Virus record (IMG/VR): IMGVR_UViG_3300034117_001294
Location: 124,001-188,000 of that record
DNA length: 64,000 nucleotides
Reading direction: 5' to 3' (one strand)
Below the pieces are notes generated by a model. That model made no database searches and was not told where the DNA came from. It saw nothing but the letters and a program-made list of their open reading frames with translations. Shown here piece after piece: positions 318 to 41,671 of this stretch. Made by a program: the position numbers and the translations under genes. Position 1 is the stretch's first letter, and the number at the start of each line of letters is the position of its first letter.

Positions 318-1013
318 ATGATTAAAACTATAATATCAGGTGTTGATGCTGACAAATACATATACAAAACAAATTTAAAATTTGCAGATGATTTTTGTCA
401 GGATCTGTTAGGTCAAGTTAAACTTAGCATAGACAATCTTGTTTTTAGAAATAACTACAACGACCCTAGAAATAACCCAAGAGATACTTTTAATTTAATA
501 GGAATTGAAGATTCAAGAGAATTGATTCGACGAGGCAGGCAAATCAAGGAATACTTTACAGAAAGTAATGTTATTAACTTTACTCAATATTTTCTTACAG
601 AACATGATACTTCTGAATTCCTTTCACTAACTCCGGACTTTTTAAAAGAACCCACTCCCGGCGAGCCAGTTCCTATATTCCAAATTAGCCACGGAGGAGA
701 AATCCTGCCGCCCCATAAAGGTCATAAAAGAAAAAGTTCTCTGTTTATGCTACTCGAAGGTAACGGAGAAGAGACTAGATGGTATCGAGAAAAAGAGCCA
801 TTCGAGATTATTCACACTACTAGAATACCAGACTTAGATAAAATCGAACATGTGGTCAGTGCCCAAATAGAGCCAGGGTATTGGTATGTGTTCAATCATC
901 TCGAGTGGCATAGTGTACATAAGTTTAGCACTGGTATTCGAATGAACATAGGCCTAGACTTTGACAGTATCTTAGCACCCGAACTAATTAACCTAATAAA
1001 AAAGAATTCTTAA
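318..1013 (+). CDS. putative cupin / 2OG-Fe(II) oxygenase-like protein
   Basis: ILPPHKGH and WYVFNHLEWHSVH motifs spaced like a double-stranded beta-helix metal site. Confidence 0.4.
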   Translation: MIKTIISGVDADKYIYKTNLKFADDFCQDLLGQVKLSIDNLVFRNNYNDPRNNPRDTFNLIGIEDSRELIRRGRQIKEYFTESNVINFTQYFLTEHDTSEFLSLTPDFLKEPTPGEPVPIFQISHGGEILPPHKGHKRKSSLFMLLEGNGEETRWYREKEPFEIIHTTRIPDLDKIEHVVSAQIEPGYWYVFNHLEWHSVHKFSTGIRMNIGLDFDSILAPELINLIKKNS

Positions 1014-1014
1014 A

Positions 1015-1746
1015 ATGTCAGAAGTTAAAAACAACTATATCAAAGCCTCATGGGCACGTAGAGCAGAACTTACAGAATTAGTGTATCAACGAACACAGGG
1101 ATTCGTACATCGAGGTCCATTTCAAGCAATGAAAATTTTGCACAAGTTTAGCTGGGGCGATGGCGACTGTGCTAGCAAATTACTAGGGTTATATGAATGT
1201 GAACTATTTGAAGACATTGAACGAGTTATTAATCAACCGCACGACCTAATCTTAAACATAGGATGTGCTGAAGGTTACTATGGTATTGGTTTGGCAAAAA
1301 GAACACAGACAAAAACCATAGTGTTTGATGTAAACAAAACTGCTGTGGACATTGCAAGAGAAAATGCTGCCGCCAACGGTGTAAACAAAATTCTATTCAG
1401 TACAGACTGCACTATAGACAACTATAGATCATTCCTTGCTTCGGCTAATAATCCGTTTATCTTTATGGATTGCGAAGGTGCAGAAGAAGAAATACTTGAC
1501 CTCAATGTGATGCCAGAACTAACCAAGACCGCAGTAATGGTTGAAAGTCATGACTGTAATAGGCCTGGCCTAACTGATAAGTTAGTTGCACGATTTGCAG
1601 AAACACACAATATTAAACTGATTAGGCAAGGAAATAAAAATCCCTATATGCCGTTAATTGACGATTTAGATGATTATGATAAAATGTTGCTATGTGTGGA
1701 AGCAAGGCCTAGCACAATGATCTGGTTATACATGTATCCTAAATGA
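1015..1746 (+). CDS. class I SAM-dependent methyltransferase (FkbM-like)
   Basis: LNIGCAEGYY glycine motif I, acidic FDVN motif II, FIFMDCEGAE motif. Confidence 0.6.
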   Translation: MSEVKNNYIKASWARRAELTELVYQRTQGFVHRGPFQAMKILHKFSWGDGDCASKLLGLYECELFEDIERVINQPHDLILNIGCAEGYYGIGLAKRTQTKTIVFDVNKTAVDIARENAAANGVNKILFSTDCTIDNYRSFLASANNPFIFMDCEGAEEEILDLNVMPELTKTAVMVESHDCNRPGLTDKLVARFAETHNIKLIRQGNKNPYMPLIDDLDDYDKMLLCVEARPSTMIWLYMYPK

Positions 1747-2381
1747 AGTACGAAATTTTTAAAGAACCATTTGTCCACATTGTGATAGATGATTTTGTAC
1801 CATGGGTGTACAATTTGCAGATTATCAACGAAGCTTGTAGATTAATTCCTGGAATGATTACTAGCAAGGTCAACAGTAATCAAGGCATTGTTATTAGTCC
1901 CGGCTCGAAGAGCAGTAAGAATATGTGGCTGTTCCAGCAATACGCTGCCCGACCAAACAATTTTCAAATTTCAACTTACCTTGAACAGAGAATTTGGTCC
2001 AACGAAGTTAAGCAGATATTACTTGAAGCAAATGATTCTCTCTTTACTAGTATGTTATATACTGATTCTAGTCAGATGCTAATGAGCAAATATACCCACG
2101 AAGATCATTACAGTTGGCATAGAGATTATAATCCCACTGCTACAATGAACTATATGTTTGCTAAAGACCCATCTAAATTTACAGGTGGGGATTTTGTGTT
2201 CGGCGATTGGGAAACTAAACAACCTCTTAAAACTATTCAATTTAAAAATAATAGATTAGTCATCTTTCCTAGCAGAGTCTACCACTGTGTAACTCCTGTA
2301 GTGAAAAAAGATAAAAATCCAGAGTACGATAGATTCACTGTTCAATACTGGAGTAAGCTCAAAGAGATCAGAGAAACTTGA
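1743..2381 (+). CDS. 2OG-Fe(II) oxygenase, prolyl-4-hydroxylase-like
   Basis: WHRD (HxD), FTGGDFVF, NNRLVIFPS..YHCVTPV, terminal R-F-T. Confidence 0.8.
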   Translation: MKYEIFKEPFVHIVIDDFVPWVYNLQIINEACRLIPGMITSKVNSNQGIVISPGSKSSKNMWLFQQYAARPNNFQISTYLEQRIWSNEVKQILLEANDSLFTSMLYTDSSQMLMSKYTHEDHYSWHRDYNPTATMNYMFAKDPSKFTGGDFVFGDWETKQPLKTIQFKNNRLVIFPSRVYHCVTPVVKKDKNPEYDRFTVQYWSKLKEIRET

Positions 2382-2406
2382 CATTCAGATCTAATAACGC
2401 TAATAT
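2378..2406 (+). promoter_or_regulatory. sigma70-type promoter
   Basis: TTGACA-17 bp-TAATAT upstream of tRNA-Thr. Confidence 0.6.
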
Positions 2407-2429
2407 AGTAGCTACTTAAATAAAACATT

Positions 2430-2505
2430 GCTGCCTTAGCTCAGTTGGTAGAGCACCGGTTTTGTAATCCGAAGGTCGTCAGTTCGATTCCGACAGGCAG
2501 CACCA
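2430..2505 (+). tRNA. tRNA-Thr(TGT)
   Basis: 76-nt cloverleaf: GCTGCCT/AGGCAGC acceptor, GCTC/GAGC D-stem, loop TT-TGT-AA, TTCGATT T-loop, encoded CCA. Confidence 0.9.
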
Positions 2506-2517
2506 ACTAATTAAATT

Positions 2518-3675
2518 ATGAGCCAAAAATTCAGATTCCACATATTGGGCTTGCCCCACACAGTATCCAGTAAAGAATATAATGCCTGTGCTTATACTCA
2601 GAAAGTCGTTAAATTCGGCAAGATGATGAAAGAGCGTGGGCATTATGTTATCCACTACGGACATGAAGACAGCGACCTAGTATGCGACGAGCATGTTACG
2701 GTCACTACAAACAAAGACTTAGAAATTGCTTACGGCAGCTATGACTGGCGTAAAAACTTCTTTAAGTTTGATACAGGCGATCATGCATATCAAACATTCT
2801 ATGCAAATGCTATCCGAGAAATTGGACTACGCAAACAACCTAAAGATTTTATCTTACCATTCTGGGGATCTGGTGTTCGTGCAGTATGTGATGCACACAA
2901 CGACCTAATTGTTGTTGAGCCGGGTATTGGCTACGCAGGAGGTCATTGGGCACGTTGGAAGATCTTTGAAAGCTATGCTATTATGCACGCCTTCTTTGGA
3001 TTACAAAGTGTGGGTACATGTAATCAAGATTGGTATCACGGTGTTGTTCCTAACTACTTTGACCTAGAAGACTTTACCTATGAGCCGGAAAAGAAAGAAG
3101 ATTACTTCCTGTTCTTGGGTCGAGTATATGAAGGCAAAGGAGCACACCTTGCCATTGAAGTGACTAGAAAGATTGGTGCAAAATTAATCATGGCTGGTCA
3201 GAATAACCTGGCATCAATGGGTTACGCAGAAACTCCAAGCCACGTAGAATTTGTAGGGTATGCAGATGTTGAAACTCGTAAGAAATTAATGAGCCGTGCC
3301 AAAGGAGCATTTGTTCCTAGTCTATATACCGAACCGTTTGGTGGTGTGCAAGTAGAGATGTTGTTGAGTGGTACTCCTACTATCACAACAGATTGGGGAT
3401 CATTTACAGAGAACAATGTACACGGTGTCACTGGATATCGTTGCAGAACATTTGATCAGTTTGTTTGGGCCGCTGAAAACATTGATAAGATCGATCCGGC
3501 TGCATGTCGTGCGTTTGGTGAGAACTTTAGCCTAGAACGAGTAGCACCGATGTATGAAGAATACTTCCAGATGGTGTATGATGTGCATAGCGGCAAAGGA
3601 TGGTACCAGGATCACCCAGAAAGAGAAAACCTTGATTGGTTGCGTAAGTACTATCCACCAATGGACAAGAAATGA
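2518..3675 (+). CDS. glycosyltransferase, GT4 / GT-B fold
   Basis: [12 protein letters not shown] and [23 protein letters not shown] (E-x7-E signature). Confidence 0.85.
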
Positions 3676-4610
3676 AAAGAGTAGTTTTTTACTTTGAGCC
3701 CAATTGGGCATTCGGCACAGTGCATTACGAGCTGTTCAAATATCTATGGGGACACGGATTTAACTGTCATCTGTTACCCTGGAATAAAAGTTACACTCGA
3801 GAAGAAATGTTGGAATTAAATTCCACAACTGATATTTTTGTAACTACCCCGCACGGATGGAGATTCTTAGGATATAATTACGGAACTGTTGCACCTGAAC
3901 AATGTGTTATTATAAGTCACGCTAAATTAGACATGACTGAACTTATTCATCATCACGGATATGAGGATTTTAAACGGTTCCGTAGATACGGTTGTGTCAG
4001 TCAATGGCTAGTTGATCTTAGCAAAGAGCTAGGTATCGAACGCCCGGCTGAACTAACGCCAGTAGCAATCAATTACAATACCTTCTACAGTACACCTAAC
4101 GATAATTTAAAAGTTGTAGGATATACAGGCAGCTTCCACAGAAAAGAAGAATTTGCACAGGATATGGTTGCGAGTGACTTAGCACAACCTAAGTATCATA
4201 AACGTGGTTGGTTAGTCGAAGAAGCAGTGAAACGTGCCGGATTAGAATTTAGAGTTGCCCAACAATACCATAATAGTTTTATCACTATGCCAGGATTCTA
4301 CAAAGGCATAGATGCTGTTATTGCAGCCAGTACAGAAGAAGGTGCCGGACTACCTGTTATGGAAGGCGGTGCAGCGGGCAAGCTGGTAATTGGTACTAAT
4401 GTTGGACACTGGGCTCAGAGAATTGGTGATGCAGGCGGATATGCTGTGCCTGTAGCAGAAGACGAATTCTTAGAAAAAACTGTGGAAATTTTAAGTTATT
4501 ATAAAGATAACCCTAACAAGTACAGACAACGATGCTTGGAAATTCAAGAACATGCTAAAAGTTACGATTGGAAGCACGTTATTGACAAGTGGGTTAACAT
4601 TTTATCTTAA
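3672..4610 (+). CDS. glycosyltransferase, GT4-like
   Basis: [27 protein letters not shown] matches the GT-B nucleotide-sugar binding motif. Confidence 0.7.
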
Positions 4611-4671
4611 TTAACTACCCTGATAACGTGGACTGATTTACGAATAATTATGTAAAATAGCTGAGGGGTTT

Positions 4672-5409
4672 ATGACTAAAGCTGCTACTTTTGATTGGTC
4701 TGCGTTAGATAGAAATCTAATAACAGAAATGGTAAATTTTATAAGCTACAATGTTGTGGATAAATCCTTATCTCCGACTAGCTTTTCTAACAAACTACGA
4801 GAAATCTTAAGATTTTTTAAAATACCTGTCAAGGTTAGATCCTGCTACAATACTAAAACAGAAAAAAATTCTGTATGGGTAGGTGGATTATACGACAGTG
4901 TGTTAGATCAAGAGGGCAAAACGTCCATCACGCTTTGTATCCAATATCATTCCTCCGACGTAATTATCAAAGCAAATAAAAATTTATTTCGCAGAGTCTG
5001 TATAGCAATAGCAGACACAGTAATGCACGAAGTTATTCATATGCGACAATATCGTAGACGAGGTTATAAAGACATTCCCGGATATGAAAGTTCTGCTAAT
5101 TTGGCAAGAAAACGCAACGAACAAGTGTATCTAGGAAATGGGGACGAGATTGATGCATACAGCTTTAACATCGCGTGTCAGCTGCTTGACAGATTTGGGG
5201 AAGATAAAACATCTATAGTAAATTATCTAAACACTGATCTCCGTGATAGGAGATTAAAAAAGGACGGCTTCAGAATGTATCTAGATACATTTGATCACAA
5301 TCACAGTCACAGAGTAATCCGTAAATTAAAAAAGAAGGTAATGAATTATATTCCTAATGCCCAGGAAATAGCAAAGCCTTATAAAACATCTGATTGGTTA
5401 AAAAAGTGA
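4672..5409 (+). CDS. HExxH zincin-like protein
   Basis: MHEVIHMRQ plus downstream DEIDAYSFNIA. Confidence 0.5.
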   Translation: MTKAATFDWSALDRNLITEMVNFISYNVVDKSLSPTSFSNKLREILRFFKIPVKVRSCYNTKTEKNSVWVGGLYDSVLDQEGKTSITLCIQYHSSDVIIKANKNLFRRVCIAIADTVMHEVIHMRQYRRRGYKDIPGYESSANLARKRNEQVYLGNGDEIDAYSFNIACQLLDRFGEDKTSIVNYLNTDLRDRRLKKDGFRMYLDTFDHNHSHRVIRKLKKKVMNYIPNAQEIAKPYKTSDWLKK

Positions 5410-6149
5410 GTAAAAGAACAAAAATGAAAAAATTCAACTGCTGCCCAAAGTTAGATAAAAAAGTAGTAGTCCCAACAAGAAAAGAAGTCCTTGAAATATT
5501 TAATGATATTAAACCTACAATAGTTAACCAATTTTATGCAGTTGATGAACTAATTCAAGACCTCGGAGTATTCATTGGAAAGCGTTTTAATATCGATGTT
5601 AAACATGCAGAAGCTACCCAAGTGGATCAAAATGACATTGAACTCAATGGATACTACGATGGCGGCTTAGATGAAGCCGGCGATGTTGCTATTGAGATAT
5701 ACCTAGTTACTAACCCAATGCAGGACGTCATGTTAATTGACGAAACTCAATTCGATATTATCACAAGAAAAATTGCAGATACCTTAAGTCATGAAGTTAT
5801 CCATATGCAGCAATTCCGTGCAAGAGATTTCTTAGAAGTTGAAAAATGGGACTTTGAAACAGCCTACGAAGAAGGCGATGACGAATACGACGAAGCAGAA
5901 GAAAATCGCTGGTACCTAAGTAGCCCAGATGAGATTAATGCCTATGCATATAACATTGCCAACGAATTGTTAGATAGAAATAGTTATCCACAAGTAATTG
6001 AAAAATTAAACAAAGTTAAAGACATTGCAATTGAAGACAGTATTAATCTTTGGGCATATGTTAACGCATTTTCCAAAGATGTAAATCATCCAGTTTTACG
6101 TAAATTAATCAAAAAAGTTTATAAAAGTTTAGATCGCTTAAACAGATAA
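5394..6149 (+). CDS. HExxH zincin-like protein, paralogue of 4672-5409
   Basis: SHEVIHMQQ plus DEINAYAYNIA; start may be a downstream Met. Confidence 0.5.
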   Translation: MVKKVSKRTKMKKFNCCPKLDKKVVVPTRKEVLEIFNDIKPTIVNQFYAVDELIQDLGVFIGKRFNIDVKHAEATQVDQNDIELNGYYDGGLDEAGDVAIEIYLVTNPMQDVMLIDETQFDIITRKIADTLSHEVIHMQQFRARDFLEVEKWDFETAYEEGDDEYDEAEENRWYLSSPDEINAYAYNIANELLDRNSYPQVIEKLNKVKDIAIEDSINLWAYVNAFSKDVNHPVLRKLIKKVYKSLDRLNR

Positions 6150-6165
6150 TTGGTAAAGTCGATAC

Positions 6166-6194
6166 TTGACAAAACCTTAAATGTGCTGTATTAT
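6166..6194 (+). promoter_or_regulatory. sigma70-type promoter
   Basis: TTGACA-17 bp-TATTAT. Confidence 0.7.
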
Positions 6195-6200
6195 ATACAC

Positions 6201-6443
6201 ATGTTTAAGGTTTTTTCTTTAGTGATCATTTTGTTAGCTGGCTGTTCTACTACCAGCTATAGAATTCTAACTCCTACGGAAGTTAGCAATATTCCAATTG
6301 ATTGCTGGAATAAAAATCGAATCAACGGATGGTTAACTGAACAACTGCAATTTGCAGAGAAAGATGCAAAAACAAATGGTGCCAGCATTAACGCTATTAA
6401 GCACAAAATTTGGCAAATTCGTACTGATTGCAACGGCCGCTAG
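6201..6443 (+). CDS. small lipoprotein
   Basis: ATG at 6201; signal peptide with lipobox LLAGC. Confidence 0.6.
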   Translation: MFKVFSLVIILLAGCSTTSYRILTPTEVSNIPIDCWNKNRINGWLTEQLQFAEKDAKTNGASINAIKHKIWQIRTDCNGR

Positions 6444-6732
6444 TCTAGTAGGGTGTGCAAGCACTACGCAACGTATTCTGCCGTCGTCGCATACTCTAGG
6501 TAGTTTTAAACCAGATTGCACCATTGCCAAAGAACAGGTTGAATGGTTACGCAGTATTCGGCCAACTCTACATGAGCGTCGAGACGCTTATCTTGAGGTA
6601 ACCTCTTGGGGTGGGTTTTCTAAAGAGTTTGCCAAAAACAAAGAGATTGCAAACGGTCGTATAGATTATTTGATTGACGCAAACATTGATGAGATTTACT
6701 ACAGATGCAACTTTCGACACAAATCTTACTAA
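6352..6732 (+). CDS. lipoprotein, apparent paralogue of upstream ORF
   Basis: Lipobox SLVGC; shares the C-S/A-(S)TT-x-RIL...DC...W-L pattern; exact start uncertain. Confidence 0.5.
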   Translation: MQRKMQKQMVPALTLLSTKFGKFVLIATAASLVGCASTTQRILPSSHTLGSFKPDCTIAKEQVEWLRSIRPTLHERRDAYLEVTSWGGFSKEFAKNKEIANGRIDYLIDANIDEIYYRCNFRHKSY

Positions 6733-7283
6733 CTGCTGTACTCTTTACTAATTCTGCGATCGCACAAGATTGCATTATGAAAGAGCGAACAACATCAAAA
6801 GAAATCGGACGGATACATGAAATTAAAAATGTAGTAGCCGAAGTTAATCCGTTTGGCAAAGGACAATACAAATGCACAGCTAGTCTAGAGGGCTATACTG
6901 GCGGGAAGTGGCATCAAGGTAAAGGTGAATTTATTTGGTCAGGTGACTATAGTCATGCCAAAGCCTGTGGTGCCGCAACTGAATTGGCAAAGAAAAATTT
7001 GCTCACAGGCTTATATTCAAGTACAATAACAAGTGAGACGTTCGTAGTTTGTAAAGAGCAGGAAGAAAAAGATAGACCTCTTTTAAATCCTAAGATTGGA
7101 ACAATTATAGATGATGTTCGTAGATTACGAGCCCATATAAATTATCCCAATGCATTTTACCACAACGGAGAAGAATGTAGATGGTATCTCGAAACTGGCT
7201 GGAATGGCAAGGACATTACACAGTTTCAAGGAATTGTTTGCAGATATGGTCCTACAAAATGGATCATAGTTGATAAATTTTAA
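6705..7283 (+). CDS. exported Cys-containing hypothetical protein
   Basis: N-terminal signal peptide (A-I-A|QDC), several Cys. Confidence 0.5.
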   Translation: MQLSTQILLTAVLFTNSAIAQDCIMKERTTSKEIGRIHEIKNVVAEVNPFGKGQYKCTASLEGYTGGKWHQGKGEFIWSGDYSHAKACGAATELAKKNLLTGLYSSTITSETFVVCKEQEEKDRPLLNPKIGTIIDDVRRLRAHINYPNAFYHNGEECRWYLETGWNGKDITQFQGIVCRYGPTKWIIVDKF

Positions 7284-7303
7284 CACACACAGAAAGAGTA
7301 GTT

Positions 7304-7432
7304 ATGACAAACTTTATTGTAGGAACAATCTTTGGAATTATCCTAGCCACTGCTGGAGCATCTGGCATTGCAAAAATTATCGACAGAGGTGTCGATCAAA
7401 CTAAAATTATCATTCAGGAGAATGTAAAATGA
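7304..7432 (+). CDS. small membrane protein (42 aa)
   Basis: MTNFIVGTIFGIILATAGASG...; stop overlaps the next ATG. Confidence 0.5.
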   Translation: MTNFIVGTIFGIILATAGASGIAKIIDRGVDQTKIIIQENVK

Positions 7433-8025
7433 AGCGTATTTCAATTGTTCTAGCAGTACTAGCGTTGTCTGCATGTTCGTCTATGACAGAACTGAGGACT
7501 GAGAATTTAGAGAAAAAGACTGTACCTACTTGGTATATCGATCATGTTGATGTAGGATCGGAAATGAAAGCATGGTATAAGCCGTGGGATCAAAACGGTA
7601 TGTATTATGCAGTAGCCGAAGATGTAAGTCCTTCAATGGAAATGGCCATGAAGAAAGCTACACTTAAGGCAAAAGCAAAAATTGCAGATCGAGTTAACGG
7701 TGAAATGAATAATCGTACAATTATTCGATACGACGAATCCGGTTCCCCAGATCGTCCATCAGGTCGGGCTCAGAGCCAAGATGTAATTGTAAATTTGATC
7801 GCCGAAAGTGTAGTACGTACTTACGGCGTTGAAAAGAAGATGGTCATCTTTAATCCAGAAGCAAATAACTTCAGAGTATTTGTTATGCTAAAAATTAGTC
7901 AACAAGATGTTAAGGCCATGGCAGCTACTTATGATCAAAACAAGCAGGTAAAACTTGAAGGTAGGGTTGGCGGCAAAACGCTAGATCAAACTGCTACTGA
8001 AGTTTTAGATCAAGCACGTCGATAA
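7429..8025 (+). CDS. LPP20-like lipoprotein
   Basis: Lipobox LSAC; P-x-W motif, 'YYAVAEDVSPSMEMA..KA...AK..IA' pattern. Confidence 0.55.
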   Translation: MKRISIVLAVLALSACSSMTELRTENLEKKTVPTWYIDHVDVGSEMKAWYKPWDQNGMYYAVAEDVSPSMEMAMKKATLKAKAKIADRVNGEMNNRTIIRYDESGSPDRPSGRAQSQDVIVNLIAESVVRTYGVEKKMVIFNPEANNFRVFVMLKISQQDVKAMAATYDQNKQVKLEGRVGGKTLDQTATEVLDQARR

Positions 8026-8086
8026 TCAAGAACGTAATAGCAGGTGCTTGATCTTAGATAATTAAAAGAATAAAACAAAGGATCCC

Positions 8087-8785
8087 ATGAAAAACAAACC
8101 CAAGTTCAATGTTAAGCCGGCACAGGCAGCACCTGCGGCTGCACCGGCACAACAAGGTAGAGCACCTAGCATTATGATCGCTGTTCCAGCAATGGAAATG
8201 GTCAATGCTGAATTTGCACAGCACTTAGCAATGGCGGCAGCTAATCTTGTTGCCAACGGAATTAAGATTAACTGTGCATTCAACATTGGTTCAGTTATTA
8301 CTATTGCTCGCCGTAACTTAACTGATATCTTTCTCAAGAGCGACTTCGATTATATTTGGTGGGTTGACTCAGATATGAAGTTTCCTATTGATGCACCTAT
8401 TCGTTTGCTCAAGAGAAACAAACCAATTGTCGGGGTAAACTATCGTCGACGCCGTTTCCCTAATGCTAACTTTACAGGTATGCTAGGGTCTAATGGTCAG
8501 TTCCGTGAATTTGAAACTAGAGATGATAGCCCTCCAATGGAATTGATTGATGTCCTACCGCACGGATGTGTATTAGTACATCGTTCAGTTTATGAAAAAA
8601 TCCCTCAACCTCACTACTTGCAAGAATATATTCCTGAGCTCAATCTTGAGATCGGTGAAGATATCTATTTCTGTCAACAGGCACAGAAGGCAGGTTATGA
8701 AGTTTGGTGTGATCAAGAGTTGAGTCGTGAAATAAGCCACATCGGCATATTCCACTTCAACTATAACCTAAGTGTGCCTAAATAA
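8087..8785 (+). CDS. glycosyltransferase family 2-like
   Basis: WVDSD (DxD), GCVLVHRSVYEKI, GEDIYFC. Confidence 0.7.
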   Translation: MKNKPKFNVKPAQAAPAAAPAQQGRAPSIMIAVPAMEMVNAEFAQHLAMAAANLVANGIKINCAFNIGSVITIARRNLTDIFLKSDFDYIWWVDSDMKFPIDAPIRLLKRNKPIVGVNYRRRRFPNANFTGMLGSNGQFREFETRDDSPPMELIDVLPHGCVLVHRSVYEKIPQPHYLQEYIPELNLEIGEDIYFCQQAQKAGYEVWCDQELSREISHIGIFHFNYNLSVPK

Positions 8786-8797
8786 AGAAAGATCACC

Positions 8798-8956
8798 ATG
8801 TTCGAAAGTATTGAATTGAGAAAAGTCGAGAACGGTATTGTTATTCTAATCAGAGATGACGAGAACAACGAAAAAGAGTTTGTATACGATACTGACCGCA
8901 AGGCTTTGAAATTCATCAAAGAATTGTTAGAAACTAAGGTAGCCAACGTAAAGTGA
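8798..8956 (+). CDS. hypothetical protein (52 aa)
   Basis: MFESIELRKVENG... fills the gap; stop overlaps the GTG of galE. Confidence 0.55.
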   Translation: MFESIELRKVENGIVILIRDDENNEKEFVYDTDRKALKFIKELLETKVANVK

Positions 8957-9957
8957 AAGTTATTTTAGTCACTGGCGGTAGTGGCTACGTAGGTAGTCAT
9001 GTTGCAAAAATGCTTTTCGAGCATGGGTATTTTCCTGTTGTATTTGACATGCAGGCCAAAGCAAGGCCGTGGGCAAGTCCCCATTGGCCTGCTGTTTGCG
9101 GAGACATAAACAACAAATGGTCATTAGACTTGTTATTTGAACAGTGGCAATTTGATGCAGTTATACACCTTGCCGCTAGTAGCGAAGTTGGTGCGAGTGT
9201 TACTGATCCATTAAGATACTATCAAAACAATGTAGGCGGAACAGCCGAGTTGTTGCGAGCCTGTGCAAAACATAACGTAACCAAAGTTATTTTTAGTTCT
9301 ACAAGTAGTGTCTACGGAGAGGTCAATATCAATAATCTTCCTACTAAAGAAGATCATGCTAAAACTCCAGTTACTAGTTACGGCTCAAGTAAATGGGCTG
9401 TTGAATGTATGCTACGAGATGTAGACATAGCACATAATATTAGGTCAGTTAGCTTACGATATTTTAATGCCAGCGGTGCTAGTCCGGATGGTACGATCGG
9501 AGAATTTCGTAACAGACCCACGCATTTGATTCCTAGCATACAAAATGTATACGACGGAAAAAAGGATGCGTTTGATATTTACGGAGTAGACTATCCTACA
9601 AAGGATGGTAGTGCTGTTCGTGACTTTACTCACATATGGGACATTGCAGATGCACATTTAAAAGCATTGCAGTATCTTGATGCAGGCGGAAAAACTGATG
9701 CAGTTAACATAGGTGCAGGGTCCGGCAAGAGTGTCTTAGAGATGTTAATCGAATACCAAGACCAAAAAGACCAAGCAATCACTGTTAACATAACGCCAAG
9801 AAGGCCCGGCGATATCCCTATGAATTATGCAGACATTGCCAAGGCAAAAAGCATTCTCGATTGGGAGCCAAAAATGAGTAGTGCTAAAAAAATTATAGAA
9901 GATGCTATTCAATGGTATTCAAGTGACCTTTACAAAGAACTAGCGAGTAATTCATGA
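8953..9957 (+). CDS. galE: UDP-glucose 4-epimerase
   Basis: TGGSGYVGSH, HLAA, FSSTSSVYG, YGSSK (YxxxK), LRYFNASG, DGSAVRDFTH, RRPGD. Confidence 0.9.
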   Translation: MKVILVTGGSGYVGSHVAKMLFEHGYFPVVFDMQAKARPWASPHWPAVCGDINNKWSLDLLFEQWQFDAVIHLAASSEVGASVTDPLRYYQNNVGGTAELLRACAKHNVTKVIFSSTSSVYGEVNINNLPTKEDHAKTPVTSYGSSKWAVECMLRDVDIAHNIRSVSLRYFNASGASPDGTIGEFRNRPTHLIPSIQNVYDGKKDAFDIYGVDYPTKDGSAVRDFTHIWDIADAHLKALQYLDAGGKTDAVNIGAGSGKSVLEMLIEYQDQKDQAITVNITPRRPGDIPMNYADIAKAKSILDWEPKMSSAKKIIEDAIQWYSSDLYKELASNS

Positions 9958-27801: not shown

Positions 27802-30531
27802 ATGACAGCACCAGTATGGATTACCAATGCGGGGTTCCTGGGCACGTTAACAGAACGAACTGCTATTAATATACCATTTTCAGTTGAAGGCACTGGATCT
27901 ACATTCAGTGTTATAAGCGGGAAGCTTCCGGACGGAATGGTTTTACAATTAGTAACTACTGCTACGTCGACTACTACAACTGGGTTTATTATTGGAAACC
28001 CTATGAGCGTGCCTTCTACAATTAGAAGTCAATTTGTAGTTCGTGCAAAAAATGCACAGGGTGTAGCTGACCGTACGTTTTCAGTAGATGTAACTAGCAA
28101 TCAAGATCCAGTATGGGTAACTCCTAGCGGATTCCTAGCAGTAGGAACCAGTGGTGAGTGTTTTGCAGTAAACGAACATATTGTAGATTATCAATTGTCT
28201 GCTGTAGCTAATGTCTTGTTTGAAAATATGAAACTAAGATATTACATTGCAGACGGAGACGGGCAACTACCCAAAGGGATTAAATTAACTGAAGACGGTA
28301 GATTAACTGGCGTTATTGATGAAATAACTGTGCAAGAAGAGCCGGTTGGAGTTTCAGGCAACGGATACGACACTGAAAAATATGACCGTTATCCGTATGA
28401 TAGTGCTTTCATTATTGAAAATAAAACTAATCGTCCAAAATACATTAAGAAAATTTATCAATTCTATGTAACTGCCACTGACAGTTTTAATAGCAGTCGT
28501 AAATTATTTAAATTGCAAGTTGTTGATGTAAACAGCTTACGTGCAGACACTGGGTATATTTCAGCAGATGCAAGATGTTTTCAAGCAGGCGACAGTTACT
28601 TGTATGCACCTGCTTGGCTAAGTCCGGCGAACTTGGGTATTCGTCGTGCCGCGAACTATCAAATTGTTAGAATACAAACATATGATCCGCACCCTGAACT
28701 AGGTGCAGTTAATTGGATCTGGGATAATATTAGTGTAAATCCGGAAGTACGAGCTATTGCTGATACTCAGTACAATACAGGACCAAGTGGCTTACCTGTA
28801 ACTGTAAGAGGTGTAGTTGATACGTTTGCTGAGTTACCGTTAGTTAATACCATCGGTGATTTGTACAATGTAGTAGATGAAACTGTTAGCTATGTGTGGA
28901 ACGGAACGGATTGGGAAAGTGCAGACTTCTTACCTAAGTATAACCGTGCTGGTATGAGTGAGGTGCATTTAAAGAGCTTGTCTAGCTTGCCTCAAGTTGG
29001 ACAATTGCTTAGATTGGACACATATGTGCCCGATGCAATATACGATACTACTTATACAATCAGTTCAGTGACAGGAACTACTTCAACTTGTGTAGTTGGT
29101 ATTAAACATAGTCCAGTACTTGTAGGCGATACGGTAGTATATGACACTACACTAAGAGACGACATTCCAGATAATACTATTCTATTCGTTGGAAGTGAGA
29201 GTCAAAAGCCGCCCGGATTTAATTTAAATGAAACGTCTGGAGACCTATACGGACAAATTCCGTACATACCTGCATATAGTGAAGATTACAAATTTACTAT
29301 TAGGATGATTAAAACTGATCCTAAGACCGGAGATCAAAGTAAAAGCGATAGAGTATTTCAATTAAGACTACAAGGCAGTGTAAACACTGATTTACAATGG
29401 ATTACTACCTCTACCGTAGGAACAATTGCAGCAGGATATCAAAGTGAGCTATCAGTAGTAGCACAACATGAAAATTTACCCGACTTAGGAATTCAATACA
29501 GATTTGTACAAGGTGAATTACCTGCAGGTTTAGAATTTAAGAATGACGGAAGTATTGTGGGGAAAATTCCTTATGGTGGAACTACTGAAGTTGATTACTA
29601 CCAACCTACAGAATTTACCATCGATGGTGGCGGAACTACATTTGACCGTGCATATACGTTTACAGTAGAAGCTACTAATGCCTATCGACTGGCAACAATT
29701 GATCAAGAGTTTACAATTCTTATTGGAGACAACGATCCAACTCCGTTTAGCAGCGTGTACATGAGACCGTTCATGGCACGACATAGAAGAAAAGTCTATA
29801 GAGATTTTATTAACAATAGAGATGTATTCGATCCAAAGGTATTATACCGACCATCGGATCCAGCATTCGGGCTACAAAAAGATATTCGAATGACTTTAGA
29901 GTACGGCATTGAGCGATTAAACTTAGCTGAATACGTTTTAGGGCTACAGAATTATTTCTACAATAAGAGATTCTATTTTGGAGATGTCAAGACAATTCCT
30001 GCAGAAGACGCTCAAGGAAATTATGTTTACGACTTTGTCTACGTTGACATTATTGACAGCCAAAGTAATACATTAGGGAAAAGTCCGGATAATATCAGTT
30101 TCTTGATTAATCAGGGACTGGTTAATTTATACAGTAATAGCGTTGAAAACTGGCAAAAGAGTCTAGAAAGCGTTCAAATATACGGCGAAACTATTAAAGT
30201 AGACGAATATTTACGTCCTAGATTTATGAGTACTATTCAACAGGCAACTGGAGCACCTTTAGGATTTATTAAAGCGATGCCAATTTGTTATGCATTACCC
30301 GGCGAAGGCTATAAAATTAAAAGAAAGATTGAGCTTAATGGATTTGACTTTAAGTTAATTGATTTCGAAGTTGATAGATTAATTATTGATCAAACACTAG
30401 ATTACAGTGGCGATAAATATCTCAAGTTCCCAATTAAGAATGTTGATGATGTACAACCATTAAATGTGCTGGCTGGTCCAGACGGTATCATTATTACTGA
30501 CTCTGATGGAAACGCACTACTAGTTGAATAA
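27802..30531 (+). CDS. baseplate wedge-like protein with Ig-like repeats
   Basis: Repeated P-x-W-(I/V)T...G.L and SG.LP.G...G.(I/L).G motifs. Confidence 0.6.
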   Translation: MTAPVWITNAGFLGTLTERTAINIPFSVEGTGSTFSVISGKLPDGMVLQLVTTATSTTTTGFIIGNPMSVPSTIRSQFVVRAKNAQGVADRTFSVDVTSNQDPVWVTPSGFLAVGTSGECFAVNEHIVDYQLSAVANVLFENMKLRYYIADGDGQLPKGIKLTEDGRLTGVIDEITVQEEPVGVSGNGYDTEKYDRYPYDSAFIIENKTNRPKYIKKIYQFYVTATDSFNSSRKLFKLQVVDVNSLRADTGYISADARCFQAGDSYLYAPAWLSPANLGIRRAANYQIVRIQTYDPHPELGAVNWIWDNISVNPEVRAIADTQYNTGPSGLPVTVRGVVDTFAELPLVNTIGDLYNVVDETVSYVWNGTDWESADFLPKYNRAGMSEVHLKSLSSLPQVGQLLRLDTYVPDAIYDTTYTISSVTGTTSTCVVGIKHSPVLVGDTVVYDTTLRDDIPDNTILFVGSESQKPPGFNLNETSGDLYGQIPYIPAYSEDYKFTIRMIKTDPKTGDQSKSDRVFQLRLQGSVNTDLQWITTSTVGTIAAGYQSELSVVAQHENLPDLGIQYRFVQGELPAGLEFKNDGSIVGKIPYGGTTEVDYYQPTEFTIDGGGTTFDRAYTFTVEATNAYRLATIDQEFTILIGDNDPTPFSSVYMRPFMARHRRKVYRDFINNRDVFDPKVLYRPSDPAFGLQKDIRMTLEYGIERLNLAEYVLGLQNYFYNKRFYFGDVKTIPAEDAQGNYVYDFVYVDIIDSQSNTLGKSPDNISFLINQGLVNLYSNSVENWQKSLESVQIYGETIKVDEYLRPRFMSTIQQATGAPLGFIKAMPICYALPGEGYKIKRKIELNGFDFKLIDFEVDRLIIDQTLDYSGDKYLKFPIKNVDDVQPLNVLAGPDGIIITDSDGNALLVE

Positions 30532-30534
30532 AAG

Positions 30535-33072
30535 ATGAGCACAATAAGTAATTTACCACCGTTAAACACACTAACCAATGCTGTTCTGATACCAGTAGCG
30601 GATACTTCTACCAGACAAACATACTATGTAACTGTAGAAACATTAGGAACATTTTTTAGTAGAGAAACTGCGGTAGGTGCTAGCGGAGCCACTGGACCGA
30701 TTGGTCTACGAGGTGCCACAGGCAGCGGATCAACTGGTGCTACGGGGCAAGGTGGTTCAACTGGATCTACTGGTCCAAAAGGTGATATTGGCTATCCCGG
30801 AGGAACTGGTGCTACTGGTCCGCAAGGTATCCCAGGTACTGCTGCATTTATGGGTGCAACTGGTGCAACCGGAAGTCAAGGGCCTGCTGGTAGTGCAGGT
30901 GCTACAGGTAGTGCAGGTGCTACTGGTAGCGGTGCTACTGGTTCTACAGGTGCCCAAGGTGCAACCGGTGAACAAGGTGCAACCGGTCTCCAGGGTATTC
31001 CCGGAATAGCAGCATTCCAAGGCGGTACTGGTTCCACTGGTCAACAAGGTATTCCCGGCCAAGGCGGTACAGGTGCAACTGGTGCTCAAGGATCAACAGG
31101 TTCTACAGGACCCCAAGGTGCTACTGGTATTGCTGGAACATTTGCAGGTCAAGGCGGTACGGGTTCAACTGGACCAATTGGTTCAACTGGTGCTACAGGC
31201 GAAGGTGCTACAGGTGCAACAGGGGAAATTGGTCAGCCATTTGTTATTGATGCTGTAGGGTATTGGCCAACTCCGTACGACGAACGAAGTCAATATGATG
31301 ATCGTCCGTTTGGTTTTGCATTTTTAGAACTAGGTACCGGAACATTATACATTAAACAAAACGGAGATGGTAACTGGAGTGCAGGTGCACCATTTGGCGG
31401 TGCAGGTGCAACTGGTGCTACTGGACAAGGAACTACAGGTGCAACTGGTATAGGCAGTCCGGGTGCTACTGGACCAGTTGGCGGAACTGGGGCTACTGGC
31501 AATTTTGGTGCAACTGGTGCTACTGGCATTCAAGGACCGACTGGCGACTTAGGTACAACAGGTGCAACTGGTCCGTTAGGATCAACAGGTGCTACAGGTA
31601 ACTTTGGTGCTACTGGTGCTACCGGACTCCGAGGTGCTACAGGTGCAACTGGTCCGCAAGGATCAACTGGATTAGGTGCTACAGGTGCAACCGGAGCAGA
31701 CGGTGCTACCGGTCCAGACGGTGCTACTGGTTCAACTGGACCAATTGGCGGTGACGGTGCTACCGGTGCAACTGGTATTCAAGGCGAGTTAGGCTCAACT
31801 GGTGCTACAGGCATTGGTTCAACTGGTGCCACAGGTGCTACTGGTAACCAAGGAGAGCCGGGTGCTACAGGTGCTACAGGACAAGGTGCTACAGGTGCAA
31901 CAGGTGCCATTGGAGCAACAGGTGCAACAGGTGCTACTGGATTACAAGGCAGCACAGGTGCAACTGGCCCGTTAGGAACTACAGGTGCAACCGGTGCAAC
32001 CGGTGCTACTGGTCCTGCAGGTGCTACTGGTTCAGAAGGTCCAAGTATACCGGGAACTACAGGTGCGACAGGTGCGACAGGGCCGGCTGGGGCTACCGGA
32101 GCAGTCGGTTTACAAGGCAGTGAAGGAGCATCTGGTGCTACTGGTGCAACTGGTCCTCAAGGCAAATATATTACCACTGCTACATTAACTTCTAGCAATA
32201 CAATAATTGAATTTACATTAAGCGATGCTTCCGTAATAAGTGTTGGTCCAATAACCGGTGCTACTGGTCCTAGTGGGGCTACAGGTGCAACTGGAGCAGA
32301 AGGTGTAATGGGTGCTACTGGTGCTACTGGAATAGGATCAACAGGTGCGACCGGAGCAACTGGTGCAACTGGATCAATGGGAGCAACTGGTCCACAAGGA
32401 GATATCGGACTTCCAGGAAGTACAGGATCAACTGGTTTGTGGGGGTCTACTGGGCCTGCTGGATATGATGGTGCCACAGGTGCCACAGGTGCTCAAGGAT
32501 CATCGGGTGCAACTGGTGCTCAAGGATCAACTGGTGCCACTGGATTAACTGGTGCTACTGGTTCGAGTAATGCACAGGCCGCAGCTTTAGAAATTGTGCC
32601 TTATGCAGGCGGATTTACATACTATGCTAAAGGATATGAAGATAATATTACTGCTACTATTGTTGCAAGAGATGACCTAGGTGATATTAGAGGATCGTTC
32701 TTTAGAGGAACTGCTACTGTTGCAGTGTATGCTGACTTGGCAGAAAAATATCTAACAGACCGAGAATACTCAGTCGGTACTGTGATGACAGTTGGTGGCA
32801 TTGCAGAAGTTACCGCGGTAACAACTAGTGACTGTTATGTTATCGGTGTAGTCTCCGGTAAGCCTGCATATATGATGAATAGTGAATTAGAAGGCGGAAC
32901 ATATATTGCGTTAACTGGTCGTGTACCAGTTAAAGTAGAAGGGTACGTGTTAAAAGGCGAACCTATTTGGCCGTACATGGATGGCAAAGGCAGTACAACT
33001 AGCAATGGCCGACAACCATTTGCATTTGCATTAGAAAACGGTTCAGGCATTGTGGAGTGTTTAGTTAAATGA
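30535..33072 (+). CDS. collagen-like fibre with C-terminal chaperone domain
   Basis: Long Gly-X-Thr repeats; C-terminal YADLAEKY...GRVPVKV. Confidence 0.8.
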
Positions 33073-41508: not shown

Positions 41509-41671
41509 AGTACAACCAAAAGATACTAGCAAGGGACATTTTTATGTCAGCATTTGTAAGAGTGCAGTACGTATTGCCGCAGGTGCAGCCCTTATTATGG
41601 GGTCATTAGTTGTGTGCGGTGCTTTGCTTATTCTAGCAGAAATTCTAGGCATTGTTGAGGAAGTGGTATGA
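41498..41671 (+). CDS. small membrane protein (57 aa)
   Basis: GTG start; hydrophobic helices; ends LGIVEEVV. Confidence 0.55.
   Translation: MEIEVQPKDTSKGHFYVSICKSAVRIAAGAALIMGSLVVCGALLILAEILGIVEEVV

What the first reader, a model, noticed from the sequence alone, without database searches (positions are those of the whole stretch)
318..9957. Hydroxylase, methyltransferase and glycosyltransferase kit plausibly decorating the Thr-rich collagen fibres
Seen: two oxygenase-like ORFs (one P4H-like), an FkbM-like methyltransferase, two GT-B and one GT2 glycosyltransferase and GalE here, plus a TagD-like cytidylyltransferase at 41668. The virion module encodes three fibres with many dozens of Gly-X-Thr triplets. 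Known: Bacillus BclA Gly-X-Thr collagen is O-glycosylated, and giant viruses glycosylate their collagens. Inference: a phage virion glycosylation pathway. DNA-base glycosylation or host LPS modification are alternatives.
Basis: inference. Interest (0 to 1): 0.6.

Follow-up and report, generated by a model that had tools for sequence, protein, structure and literature searches.

The report
Glycosyltransferase family partnered with collagen-like fibres
A jumbo aquatic phage carries a sugar-adding enzyme whose relatives sit next to collagen-like fibre genes in many unrelated phages and in bacteria, so the phage probably sugar-coats its own fibres rather than its DNA or its host.

Summary
The listed genes are real. 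They are two oxygenase-like ORFs, a SAM methyltransferase, two GT-B glycosyltransferases, a tentative GT-A enzyme and GalE. Three collagen-like fibre genes carry 192 Gly-X-Thr triplets. About a third of the interval encodes unrelated proteins, and the fibres lie 27 kb away.

The main result concerns the first glycosyltransferase, GT1a (2518-3675). It is a highly conserved viral GT4 enzyme. In 34 of 80 related viral loci a Thr-rich collagen-like gene lies within 10 kb, and in about 20 it is the immediate neighbour, in several different gene orders. The pairing also holds at 32-45% identity: in cyanophage S-CBWM1, in a 41-kb phage, and in chromosomes of Acidobacteriota and Saccharibacteria. No thymidylate-synthase-type base hydroxylase was found. 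The enzymes have no membrane segments. Both points weaken the DNA and seroconversion alternatives.

For the oxygenases, methyltransferase and GalE it is only plausible. For the GT-A-like gene and the cytidylyltransferase it is unsupported; both look like lineage-wide genes. Most Gly-X-Thr collagens in viruses have no GT1a. No biochemical evidence exists.

The parts
318..1013 (+). 231-aa double-stranded beta-helix protein resembling 2OG oxygenases, with AspH-like PHxG...H residues. Whether it belongs to the glycosylation kit is uncertain.
   Evidence: No Pfam, PHROG or NCBIfam hit. The AF2 model has pLDDT 92. The top Foldseek PDB hits are YcfD, proline 3-hydroxylase, FIH and AspH, at E about 4e-5 and TM 0.37-0.41. 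H133, G135, H136, H198 and H201 are invariant in 28 homologues. Two homologues carry PF13759. A fatty-acid-desaturase-like gene lies directly upstream.
1015..1746 (+). Class I SAM-dependent methyltransferase, FkbM-like. Proposed to O-methylate a sugar (inferred).
   Evidence: Pfam MTS E 8e-7 and PrmA E 4e-5. TIGR01444 fkbM_fam scores 23.6 bits, below the cut-off of 37.7. In other lineages, methyltransferases of other families, including a clear FkbM domain (E 2e-8), sit beside GT1a and GT1b.
1743..2381 (+). 2OG-Fe(II) oxygenase of the prolyl-hydroxylase/PKHD superfamily. Its substrate is unknown.
   Evidence: PF13640 E 3e-11; phrog_61 E 3e-18. Only weak similarity to the S-CAM7 oxygenase that follows GT1b there. 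There are few Pro or Lys at Y in this phage's collagens.
2518..3675 (+). GT1a, a GT4-type (GT-B, retaining) glycosyltransferase. It is the member of the kit tied to collagen-like genes across genomes.
   Evidence: PF00534 E 1e-16; phrog_3408 E 8e-198. The closest solved structure is the alpha-1,2-glucosyltransferase TeGSS, 7FG9, E 2e-23. E272-x7-E280 and G201-R202...K207-G208 are invariant across 26 homologues of 32-100% identity. No membrane segment. Collagen neighbourhood.
3672..4610 (+). GT1b, a second GT-B glycosyltransferase. Its start overlaps the GT1a stop codon.
   Evidence: PF13692 and PF00534 on the C-terminal half. phrog_18799 E 1.5e-48. 31% identical (E 4e-44) to the S-CAM7 gene that follows GT1a. 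It accompanies GT1a in 33 of 81 loci. Weak best hits are to protein O-glycosyltransferases GtfA/Gtf1 and SdgA/B.
8087..8785 (+). Tentative GT-A-fold glycosyltransferase. It is a lineage-wide conserved gene, and its link to collagens is not shown.
   Evidence: phrog_1574 E 2e-25 (unknown function); phrog_12406 'glycosyltransferase' E 4e-6. Pfam GT2 only at E 0.19. Conserved W[VI]DSD, EDI and HIG motifs. AF2 pLDDT 48. 371 homologue clusters, the best 120 listed 76-91% identical, with no Pfam domain. Present in relatives G011, G016 and G019.
8953..9957 (+). UDP-glucose 4-epimerase GalE. Proposed supplier of UDP-galactose or UDP-GalNAc (inferred).
   Evidence: TIGR01179 scores 342 bits against a cut-off of 262. 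PF01370 E 6e-54. GalE-like genes flank GT1a in 15 of 80 loci.
27802..30531 (+). 909-aa fibre-module protein without collagen repeats, between the gp9-like connector and the collagens.
   Evidence: No Gly-X-Y runs. No Pfam hit. Homologues sit next to collagens in relatives G011 and G016. The upstream ORF 27276-27800 hits the baseplate wedge tail fibre connector phrog_677.
30535..33072 (+). Collagen-like fibre protein 1 (845 aa), a proposed acceptor.
   Evidence: Pfam Collagen E 1e-53. 165 Gly-X-Y triplets, 86 with Thr at Y and 7 with Pro at Y.
33069..36017 (+). Collagen-like fibre protein 2 (982 aa), a proposed acceptor.
   Evidence: Pfam Collagen E 7e-47. 147 triplets, 82 with Thr at Y.
36039..36872 (+). 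Collagen-like fibre protein 3 (277 aa), a proposed acceptor.
   Evidence: Pfam Collagen E 8e-18. 43 triplets, 24 with Thr at Y.
41668..42126 (+). Cytidylyltransferase-like protein. Probably not part of the kit.
   Evidence: PF01467 E 1e-9 only. 68-76% identical copies occur in relatives G011, G016 and G019, whether or not they have GT1a.

Best explanation
GT1a is a soluble, catalytically intact GT4 glycosyltransferase. It belongs to a family whose job is to glycosylate collagen-like proteins, most likely on the Thr hydroxyls of Gly-X-Thr repeats. In this jumbo phage it would decorate the four collagen-like fibre proteins in the cytoplasm before or during virion assembly.

Proposed roles of the other genes:
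- GT1b adds a further sugar.
- The FkbM-like methyltransferase caps a sugar.
- GalE provides UDP-Gal or UDP-GalNAc.

What is shown:
- The genes and their motifs.
- The conserved GT1a-collagen gene pair across phages and bacteria.
- The absence, in the sequence at hand, of the known DNA-glycosylation and seroconversion partners.

What is inferred: the acceptor, the sugar, the order of steps, and any part played by the two oxygenases and the GT-A-like protein.
For: 1. Neighbourhood in viral loci. Of 80 viral loci with GT1a at 72-100% identity, 34 hold a collagen-like ORF with at least 12 Gly-X-Y triplets within 10 kb; pooled over the collagen-like ORFs of these loci and the window, Y is Thr in 58% of triplets. 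In 20 of the 35 loci that have both genes (S-CAM7 included), the collagen is the immediate neighbour. The expectation for a random gene of the same loci is 5.4. The collagen lies upstream or downstream, in several gene orders.

2. Cultured phages. S-CAM7 has the order collagen, collagen, GT1a, GT1b, 2OG oxygenase, tail fibre. S-CBWM1 has a GT at only 32-33% identity directly after a Gly-Pro-Thr 'tail fiber protein'.

3. A nearly complete 41-kb phage has a collagen two genes from a GT1a at 41% identity.

4. Bacteria. 9 of 11 full-length homologues (38-55% identity to the window's GT1a), in MAGs of Acidobacteriota, Saccharibacteria and an unassigned bacterium, have a collagen-like gene within three genes, Thr-rich at Y in most. 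The flanks are cellular: TatC, an FtsX/MacB permease, GH76 and surface-protein domains.

5. On the GT1a tree the collagen-adjacent state covers the outgroups and most clades. The window lies in one derived clade where the gene moved away. Those genomes still encode collagens: 4 of 5 records, the fifth being a 48-kb fragment.

6. The E-x7-E and GR...KG motifs are invariant.

7. Precedent. C. difficile SgtA adds O-GlcNAc to Thr in the collagen repeats of BclA3 in vitro (PMC7157674). BclA of Bacillus is glycosylated (PMC8968730).

8. Methyltransferases, 2OG oxygenases and further glycosyltransferases of non-orthologous families recur beside GT1a.
Against: - In this window GT1a is 27 kb from the collagens. 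It lies in an island next to lipid- and metabolite-modifying genes.
- No NATAAATA late-type motif precedes the cluster, whereas one precedes the fibre operon. A sigma-70-like site lies upstream of GT1a. Co-expression with structural genes is therefore not shown.
- Only 1 of 47 viral records with Gly-X-Thr collagens has GT1a, so such collagens do not need it.
- In phages, proximity could partly reflect shared residence in the hypervariable host-recognition region (PMC7029224).
- GT4 enzymes of similar fold can be DNA glycosyltransferases (PMC13326640).
- The closest solved enzyme makes a small sugar, glucosylsucrose.
- Loci are not phylogenetically independent, and many are fragments.
- There are no biochemical data.
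Confidence: 0.55

Rival explanations
1. Modification of the host envelope. The glycosyltransferases, GalE and methyltransferase, together with the neighbouring AspH-like and desaturase-like genes, remodel LPS, lipid or another surface glycan of the infected cell, for example to block superinfection.
For: This is the usual reading for glycosyltransferases in the host-recognition cluster of aquatic myophages (PMC7029224; PMC12801897). The window cluster abuts three FA_desaturase-like genes and an Asp_Arg_Hydrox gene, the family that includes the lipid A hydroxylase LpxO (that membership is from my own knowledge). Secreted and lipoprotein ORFs lie inside the interval. There is a sigma-70-like site upstream of GT1a and no late-type motif.
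Against: It does not explain why GT1a sits beside collagen-like genes in unrelated phages and in bacterial chromosomes. There is no membrane glycosyltransferase, flippase or polyprenol-linked enzyme, and all enzymes lack membrane segments. GT1a is 72-78% identical across phages that presumably infect different hosts, which fits badly with host-specific surface glycans.
Confidence: 0.2
2. DNA hypermodification. The methyltransferase, 2OG oxygenase and glycosyltransferases build a glycosylated base, as in T4 hmC glucosylation, the 5-hydroxycytosine glycosides, or TET-plus-glycosyltransferase clusters.
For: The gene order methyltransferase, dioxygenase, GT, GT recalls phage TET-type clusters (from my own knowledge). 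GT4-like enzymes whose best structural match is 7FG9/8X3Q are proposed as DNA glycosyltransferases in Rhizobium phage RL38J1 (PMC13326640).
Against: No thymidylate-synthase-type hydroxymethylase or hydroxylase (PF00303) occurs in the 229-kb record, in complete S-CAM7 and S-CBWM1, or in three large relatives. The oxygenase is 2OG-FeII_Oxy_3, and Pfam returned no TET/JBP hit. The methyltransferase is FkbM/MTS-like, and Pfam returned no C5-cytosine DNA methylase hit. No nucleotide kinase or dCTPase lies in the cluster. A QueD-like gene points to a different, deazaguanine-type DNA chemistry. The bacterial GT1a-collagen pairs argue against a DNA role.
Confidence: 0.07
3. GT1a glycosylates another virion component such as capsid, tail tube or non-collagen fibre domains, or it makes a free oligosaccharide. 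Its closeness to collagens would then be a by-product of lying in the fibre module.
For: Mycobacteriophage glycosyltransferases modify capsid and tail-tube subunits (Freeman 2023, as cited in PMC12619734). The closest solved homologue makes glucosylsucrose. In many loci GT1a also lies near neck, gp15 and terminase genes.
Against: The pairing holds in bacterial chromosomes that have no phage structural genes nearby. Immediate adjacency is to collagen genes in particular, 20 observed against 5.4 expected within the same loci.
Confidence: 0.13

Closest known systems
Clostridioides difficile SgtA-BclA3 (and glycosylated BclA of Bacillus exosporium)
   Same: A dedicated glycosyltransferase acts on a collagen-like surface protein. 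SgtA adds O-GlcNAc to Thr in the collagen repeats of BclA3 in vitro (PMC7157674). The fibre layout is also the same: N-terminal domain, Gly-X-Thr collagen, C-terminal head.
   Different: Here the proteins are phage fibres. GT1a is a GT4 enzyme. Homology to SgtA was not tested because no reference sequence was at hand. In the window the glycosyltransferase is 27 kb from the collagens. Sugar and linkage are unknown.
Mycobacteriophage virion glycosylation (Freeman et al. 2023, cited in PMC12619734)
   Same: Phage-encoded glycosyltransferases modify the phage's own virion proteins.
   Different: The acceptors there are the C-termini of capsid and tail-tube subunits of actinophages. Here the proposed acceptors are collagen-like fibres of aquatic myophages and jumbo phages. 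There is no experimental proof here.
Giant-virus collagen and fibril glycosylation (Mimivirus; from my own knowledge)
   Same: A virus encodes both collagen-like proteins and the enzymes that hydroxylate and glycosylate them.
   Different: Mimivirus uses a hydroxylysine-glucose route with a bifunctional enzyme. Here Lys and Pro are almost absent from the Y position, and Thr is the likely acceptor.
TeGSS alpha-1,2-glucosyltransferase of Thermosynechococcus (PDB 7FG9)
   Same: It is the closest solved sequence relative of GT1a, with E 2e-23 over the C-terminal domain. It has the GT4 fold, uses a UDP-sugar donor and carries the E-x7-E motif.
   Different: TeGSS glucosylates sucrose. Only the donor-binding half aligns, so the acceptor cannot be carried over.
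Phage DNA glycosyltransferases of the 5-hydroxycytosine and hmC systems (PMC13326640)
   Same: GT-B enzymes with similar structural neighbours, encoded by large phages.
   Different: Those systems need a thymidylate-synthase homologue, a nucleotide kinase and a dCTPase nearby. None was found here or in complete S-CAM7 and S-CBWM1.

Membership tests
GT4 / Glycos_transf_1 retaining GT-B glycosyltransferases (GT1a, GT1b) | Pfam Glycos_transf_1 domain above the gathering score | tested here: met
   GT1a scores 61.1 bits and GT1b 29.3 bits, against a cut-off of 26.4.
GT4 / Glycos_transf_1 retaining GT-B glycosyltransferases (GT1a, GT1b) | E-x7-E motif and basic donor-binding residues conserved | tested here: met
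   For GT1a, E272 and E280 and G201-R202...K207-G208 are invariant in 26 sequences of 32-100% identity. For GT1b an E-x7-E motif is visible in the sequence.
Collagen-directed protein O-glycosyltransferase system (SgtA-BclA3 type) | The glycosyltransferase gene is genomically coupled to a collagen-like gene | tested here: met
   Met for the GT1a family. In the window itself the two are 27 kb apart, so the coupling is by homology and not by position.
Collagen-directed protein O-glycosyltransferase system (SgtA-BclA3 type) | Transfer of sugar to Thr of Gly-X-Thr repeats | not testable with these tools
   This needs an enzyme assay or glycoproteomics.
Collagen-directed protein O-glycosyltransferase system (SgtA-BclA3 type) | Sequence homology of GT1a to SgtA | not tested
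   No SgtA sequence was obtained from a tool.
Phage DNA base glycosylation (hmC or 5hoC type) | Thymidylate-synthase homologue that makes the hydroxylated base | tested here: not met
   PF00303 is absent from G000 (229 kb, 65% complete), S-CAM7, S-CBWM1 and three large relatives. A gene in the missing third of G000 cannot be excluded.
TET/JBP-type DNA hypermodification cluster | C5-cytosine DNA methyltransferase plus a TET_JBP dioxygenase | tested here: not met
   The methyltransferase hits MTS, PrmA and FkbM-like models. The oxygenase hits 2OG-FeII_Oxy_3.
Seroconversion module (GtrABC type) | Membrane-embedded glycosyltransferase and flippase | tested here: not met
   The hydropathy scan finds no membrane segment in any enzyme of the cluster.
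Collagen prolyl 4-hydroxylase | P4H-type 2OG oxygenase together with Pro at the Y position of the collagens | tested here: inconclusive
   The domain is present, but only 7, 4 and 2 Pro sit at Y. In another clade, a 2OG oxygenase next to GT1a goes with 37-56% Pro at X. That clade counts as a single evolutionary event.
UDP-glucose 4-epimerase GalE | Equivalog model above its cut-off | tested here: met
   TIGR01179 scores 342.3 bits against 262.3.
FkbM methyltransferase | TIGR01444 or PF05050 above the cut-off | tested here: not met
   23.6 bits against a cut-off of 37.7, and no PF05050 hit. It remains a class I SAM methyltransferase.
GT2 (GT-A) glycosyltransferase (8087-8785) | Pfam GT2 domain or a confident GT-A fold | tested here: inconclusive
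   PF00535 at E 0.19. AF2 pLDDT 48. A DxD-like DSD motif is conserved.
TagD glycerol-3-phosphate cytidylyltransferase | A specific TagD model, not just the generic nucleotidyltransferase domain | not tested
   Only PF01467 at E 1e-9.

The most novel reading that the evidence does not exclude
GT1a defines a previously unrecognised family of collagen-specific protein O-glycosyltransferases. The family is shared by bacteria (Acidobacteriota, Saccharibacteria) and by several unrelated groups of phages: T4-like cyanophages, jumbo phages and a 41-kb phage. Glycosylated collagen-like tail fibres would then be a common feature of aquatic phages. The many 'LPS-type' glycosyltransferases in their host-recognition clusters would at least partly serve to modify the virion.
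Probability: 0.45. Interest if true: 0.75.

Novelty: new variant of a known kind. Interest (0 to 1): 0.62.

Why it matters
Glycosyltransferases in the host-recognition regions of marine and freshwater myophages are usually put down to host LPS remodelling or DNA protection (PMC7029224, PMC12801897, PMC12619734).

A glycosyltransferase family that travels with collagen-like fibre genes, from bacteria to several phage types, points instead to glycosylated receptor-binding fibres. That would bear on host range, fibre stability, stickiness to particles and recognition by grazers or defences.

It can be tested directly, because two cultured Synechococcus phages (S-CAM7 and S-CBWM1) carry the gene pair.

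Tried and rejected
- **Complex prediction.** Complex prediction on GT1a plus GT1b gave no verdict. It counts neither for nor against binding.
- **Fold of the GT-A-like protein.** The AF2 model had pLDDT 48, so no fold search was run on it.
- **HExxH pair.** Profile search against PDB, and Atlas and Pfam searches of the HExxH pair, found nothing usable.
- **Late promoter.** The T4 late promoter TATAAATA occurs once in the window, against 5.4 expected by chance. The looser NATAAATA is found upstream of 24 of 280 genes, but of none in the cluster. Sigma-70-like sites are no more frequent than chance. Expression timing is therefore left open.
- **GT-A-like gene and collagens.** Among 20 clamp-loader relatives, the GT-A-like gene and collagens occur in the same three records. 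I rejected this as evidence. The records are 13-76% fragments and the two genes lie 13-24 kb apart, so a fragment that holds one tends to hold the other.
- **C-terminal heads.** Pfam search of the collagen C-terminal heads at E up to 5 gave nothing. A C1q-like look of the second fibre's head is only an impression.
- **Reverse test.** The test from collagen to GT1a came out nearly negative, 1 of 47. This limits the claim to 'GT1a implies collagen'.
- **Tools and codes not used.** The look-up of sequencing runs and read laying were not used.

Full report
**Setting.** The window is bases 124001-188000 of a 228,849-bp IMG/VR virus record, judged 65% complete. An identical copy of one of its proteins occurs on a 381-kb contig, so this is a jumbo phage of about 350-380 kb. 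It has T4-like features: a clamp loader, a gp9-like connector and a prohead protease. It also has a ClpA-like ATPase of the kind found in other jumbo phages. A recently described aquatic jumbo lineage, the 'moraphages', has ClpA and several glycosyltransferases among its core genes and leaves their role open (PMC12619734). I did not test whether this phage belongs to that lineage.

Clear assignments:
- 1743-2381 is a 2OG-FeII_Oxy_3 oxygenase.
- 2518-3675 (GT1a) and 3672-4610 (GT1b) are GT-B glycosyltransferases.
- 8953-9957 is GalE, above its equivalog cut-off.
- The three collagen genes are as described. They carry 355 Gly-X-Y triplets, 192 with Thr at Y.
- A fourth collagen gene with 44 more Gly-X-Thr triplets lies elsewhere in the genome.

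ORF 318-1013 had no family hit. With an alignment of 28 homologues it folds confidently (pLDDT 92). The model matches 2OG oxygenases such as YcfD, proline 3-hydroxylase, FIH and AspH. The invariant residues resemble the AspH-type His-x-Gly...His site.

Weaker assignments:
- The methyltransferase is a class I SAM enzyme that falls below the FkbM cut-off.
- The 'GT2' at 8087-8785 is tentative.
- The ORF at 41668 has only the generic cytidylyltransferase-like domain.

One third of the interval (4672-8025) encodes two HExxH paralogues and small envelope-type proteins. Thr at Y is the commonest choice in prokaryotic collagens anyway (PMC8968730).

**The central result: GT1a travels with collagen-like genes.**

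GT1a is unusually conserved. 259 viral contigs encode relatives, and the best 80 are 72-100% identical, although their flanking genes differ widely. Among cultured phages it occurs only in the Synechococcus phages S-CAM7 and ACG-2014f (71-77% identity) and, at 33%, in S-CBWM1.

- In S-CAM7 the order is two collagen-like proteins (74 and 27 Thr at Y), GT1a, a GT1b orthologue (31% identity, E 4e-44), a 2OG oxygenase, then a 1958-aa tail fibre.
- In S-CBWM1 the gene directly upstream of the glycosyltransferase is an annotated tail fibre protein made of Gly-Pro-Thr repeats.
- Across the 80 metagenomic loci, 34 hold a collagen-like ORF within 10 kb. Over all such ORFs in the GT1a loci, Y is Thr in 58% of 5303 triplets.
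- In 20 of the 35 loci that have both genes (S-CAM7 included), the collagen is the immediate neighbour. The expectation is 5.4 if GT1a were a random gene of those same loci.
- The collagen can lie on either side of GT1a, and the other flanking genes differ between lineages.

On a GT1a tree the adjacent state covers the outgroups and most clades. Several 'none' rows are identical in sequence to adjacent rows and simply come from truncated contigs. The window sits in one derived clade in which GT1a has left the fibre module. Records of that clade still carry collagens elsewhere: four of five tested, the exception being a 48-kb fragment.

**Beyond phages.** A scan of one genome per prokaryotic species found full-length homologues at 38-55% identity to the window's GT1a. 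They occur in MAGs of Acidobacteriota, Pyrinomonadaceae, Stellaceae, Saccharibacteria, Patescibacteria and an unassigned bacterium. Nine of these eleven loci have a collagen-like gene within three genes of the glycosyltransferase, Thr-rich at Y in most.

The flanking genes are cellular:
- In Saccharibacteria: TatC and a MacB/FtsX permease.
- On a 4.7-Mb Acidobacteriota contig: GH76, a triple-GT2/TPR protein and surface-protein domains.

This removes the objection that the pairing only reflects residence in a phage tail-fibre module. A nearly complete 41-kb phage, found through its collagen, also has a 41%-identical GT1a two genes away.

**Limits of the association.** The reverse does not hold. 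Of 47 viral records with at least two (Gly-X-Thr)4 runs, only that one has GT1a. Gly-X-Thr collagens are therefore common in viruses and usually lack this enzyme.

Among 20 relatives chosen by clamp loader (70-75% identity), only one has a GT1a homologue, and that one has strong collagen genes. Two of the other 19 have short collagen stretches. A 270-kb record has neither GT1a nor collagens. These records are fragments, so the counts are only indicative.

**The rest of the kit.**

- Non-orthologous methyltransferases recur beside GT1a in other lineages, including a clear FkbM domain and a sugar C-methyltransferase.
- So do 2OG oxygenases, a GT2-HtrL fusion, a GT17-like protein and GalE-like epimerases.
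- This fits a glycan-building set, so a role for the window's methyltransferase, GT1b and GalE is plausible.

The oxygenases are harder to place. Only 13 Pro and one Lys occupy the Y position here. In one clade, a 2OG oxygenase directly upstream of GT1a goes with collagens that have 37-56% Pro at X, against 23% or less in all other loci. That clade is a single evolutionary event.

Three genes look unconnected to the collagens:
- The GT-A-like gene is a very conserved gene of the jumbo group (371 homologue clusters, the best 120 listed 76-91% identical). It shows no demonstrable tie to collagens.
- The cytidylyltransferase is conserved regardless of GT1a.
- ORF 318-1013 follows a fatty-acid-desaturase-like gene. 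It faces a divergent cluster with two more desaturase-like genes, two B12-radical-SAM enzymes, an ATP-grasp enzyme and an Asp_Arg_Hydrox protein. It may belong to that island.

**Rivals.**

DNA glycosylation is a real possibility for GT4-like enzymes (PMC13326640). However:
- No thymidylate-synthase-type base hydroxylase is present in the record, in complete S-CAM7 and S-CBWM1, or in three large relatives.
- The oxygenase and methyltransferase are not of the TET or C5-methylase kinds.
- The bacterial gene pairs do not fit a DNA role.

Seroconversion-type modules are membrane-bound, whereas these enzymes are soluble. Cytoplasmic LPS-core-type activity cannot be excluded, and the literature favours host-surface roles.

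Expression timing could not be settled.

**Mechanism proposed.**
1. GalE converts host UDP-Glc or UDP-GlcNAc to the galacto form (inferred).
2. GT1a, a retaining GT4 enzyme with intact E-x7-E and donor-binding residues (shown), transfers a sugar to collagen-like fibre proteins, probably on Thr of the Gly-X-Thr repeats. This is inferred from the gene pairing and from the SgtA-BclA3 precedent.
3. GT1b extends the glycan and the methyltransferase caps it (inferred).

**Verdict.** No paper in the searched library links a glycosyltransferase family to collagen-like fibres of phages. I rate this a new variant of a known kind of system. My confidence in the main explanation is about 0.55.

Noticed in passing
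G000:C1:110001-124300 (L007 910-14201), just upstream of the window: A gene island holds three FA_desaturase-like proteins, two B12-binding or radical-SAM enzymes, an ATP-grasp enzyme and an Asp_Arg_Hydrox protein. It is mostly on the minus strand. It may be a lipid- or metabolite-modifying auxiliary cluster.
   Followed up: partly
window 4672-5409 and 5394-6149: Two paralogous proteins of about 245 aa have an invariant HExxH and further invariant residues. The family is virus-only and has no Pfam or PDB match. In the window's clade, and near GT1a in record G016, they always follow GT1a-GT1b. They may be metallopeptidases.
   Followed up: partly
window 6150-6443, 6352-6732, 6705-7283, 7429-8025: Two small ORFs overlap. 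The first has an N-terminal membrane segment and a weak Rz1/LysC-like hit. They are followed by a protein whose N-terminus looks like a signal peptide and by a lipoprotein with a lipobox. They may be spanin-like or envelope-directed proteins lying inside the 'kit' interval.
   Followed up: no
window 36876-38450; loci such as L055:4934-5776: An S8 subtilase follows the third collagen gene. In 11 other loci a papain-like C1 peptidase lies between the collagen or fibre genes and GT1a. These may be fibre-maturation or host-surface proteases.
   Followed up: no
loci L033, L037, L061, L067, L080, L082, L085: A 2OG-FeII_Oxy_3 oxygenase lies directly upstream of GT1a only in the clade whose adjacent collagens are Gly-Pro-Thr rich. 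There, X is Pro in 37-56% of triplets, against 23% or less in 28 other loci. This hints at a prolyl hydroxylase acting on X-position Pro, but it rests on one clade.
   Followed up: partly
window 17444-17950: A QueD-like 6-pyruvoyl-tetrahydropterin synthase (phrog_2389, E 3e-35) suggests a 7-deazaguanine pathway. That would be a DNA or tRNA modification route unrelated to the glycosyltransferases.
   Followed up: no
whole genome G000; window 20769, 38453, 48986, 60616: The motif NATAAATA lies within 60 bp upstream of 24 of 280 ORFs, out of 37 occurrences in all. One site precedes the 2161-aa ORF that opens the fibre operon. It looks like a late-promoter motif of the cyanomyovirus type. None lies in the glycosyltransferase cluster.
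   Followed up: partly
window 8953-9957 against record G001: G001 shares GT1a at 99% and the clamp loader at 100% identity with the window, but its GalE is only 79% identical. This is local mosaicism inside the cluster.
   Followed up: no
L304 (Acidobacteriota MAG contig, 4.68 Mb) 3570-9764: The bacterial collagen-like gene (560 aa, 80 Thr at Y) is flanked on one side by the GT1a homologue. On the other side is an 836-aa protein with three GT2 stretches and TPR repeats, then a GH76. This looks like a cellular surface-glycoprotein locus.
   Followed up: partly
window 51659-53974: A 771-aa ClpA/ClpB-like double AAA+ ATPase is about 40% identical to those of jumbo phages of Agrobacterium, Pseudomonas, Vibrio and E. 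coli.
   Followed up: no
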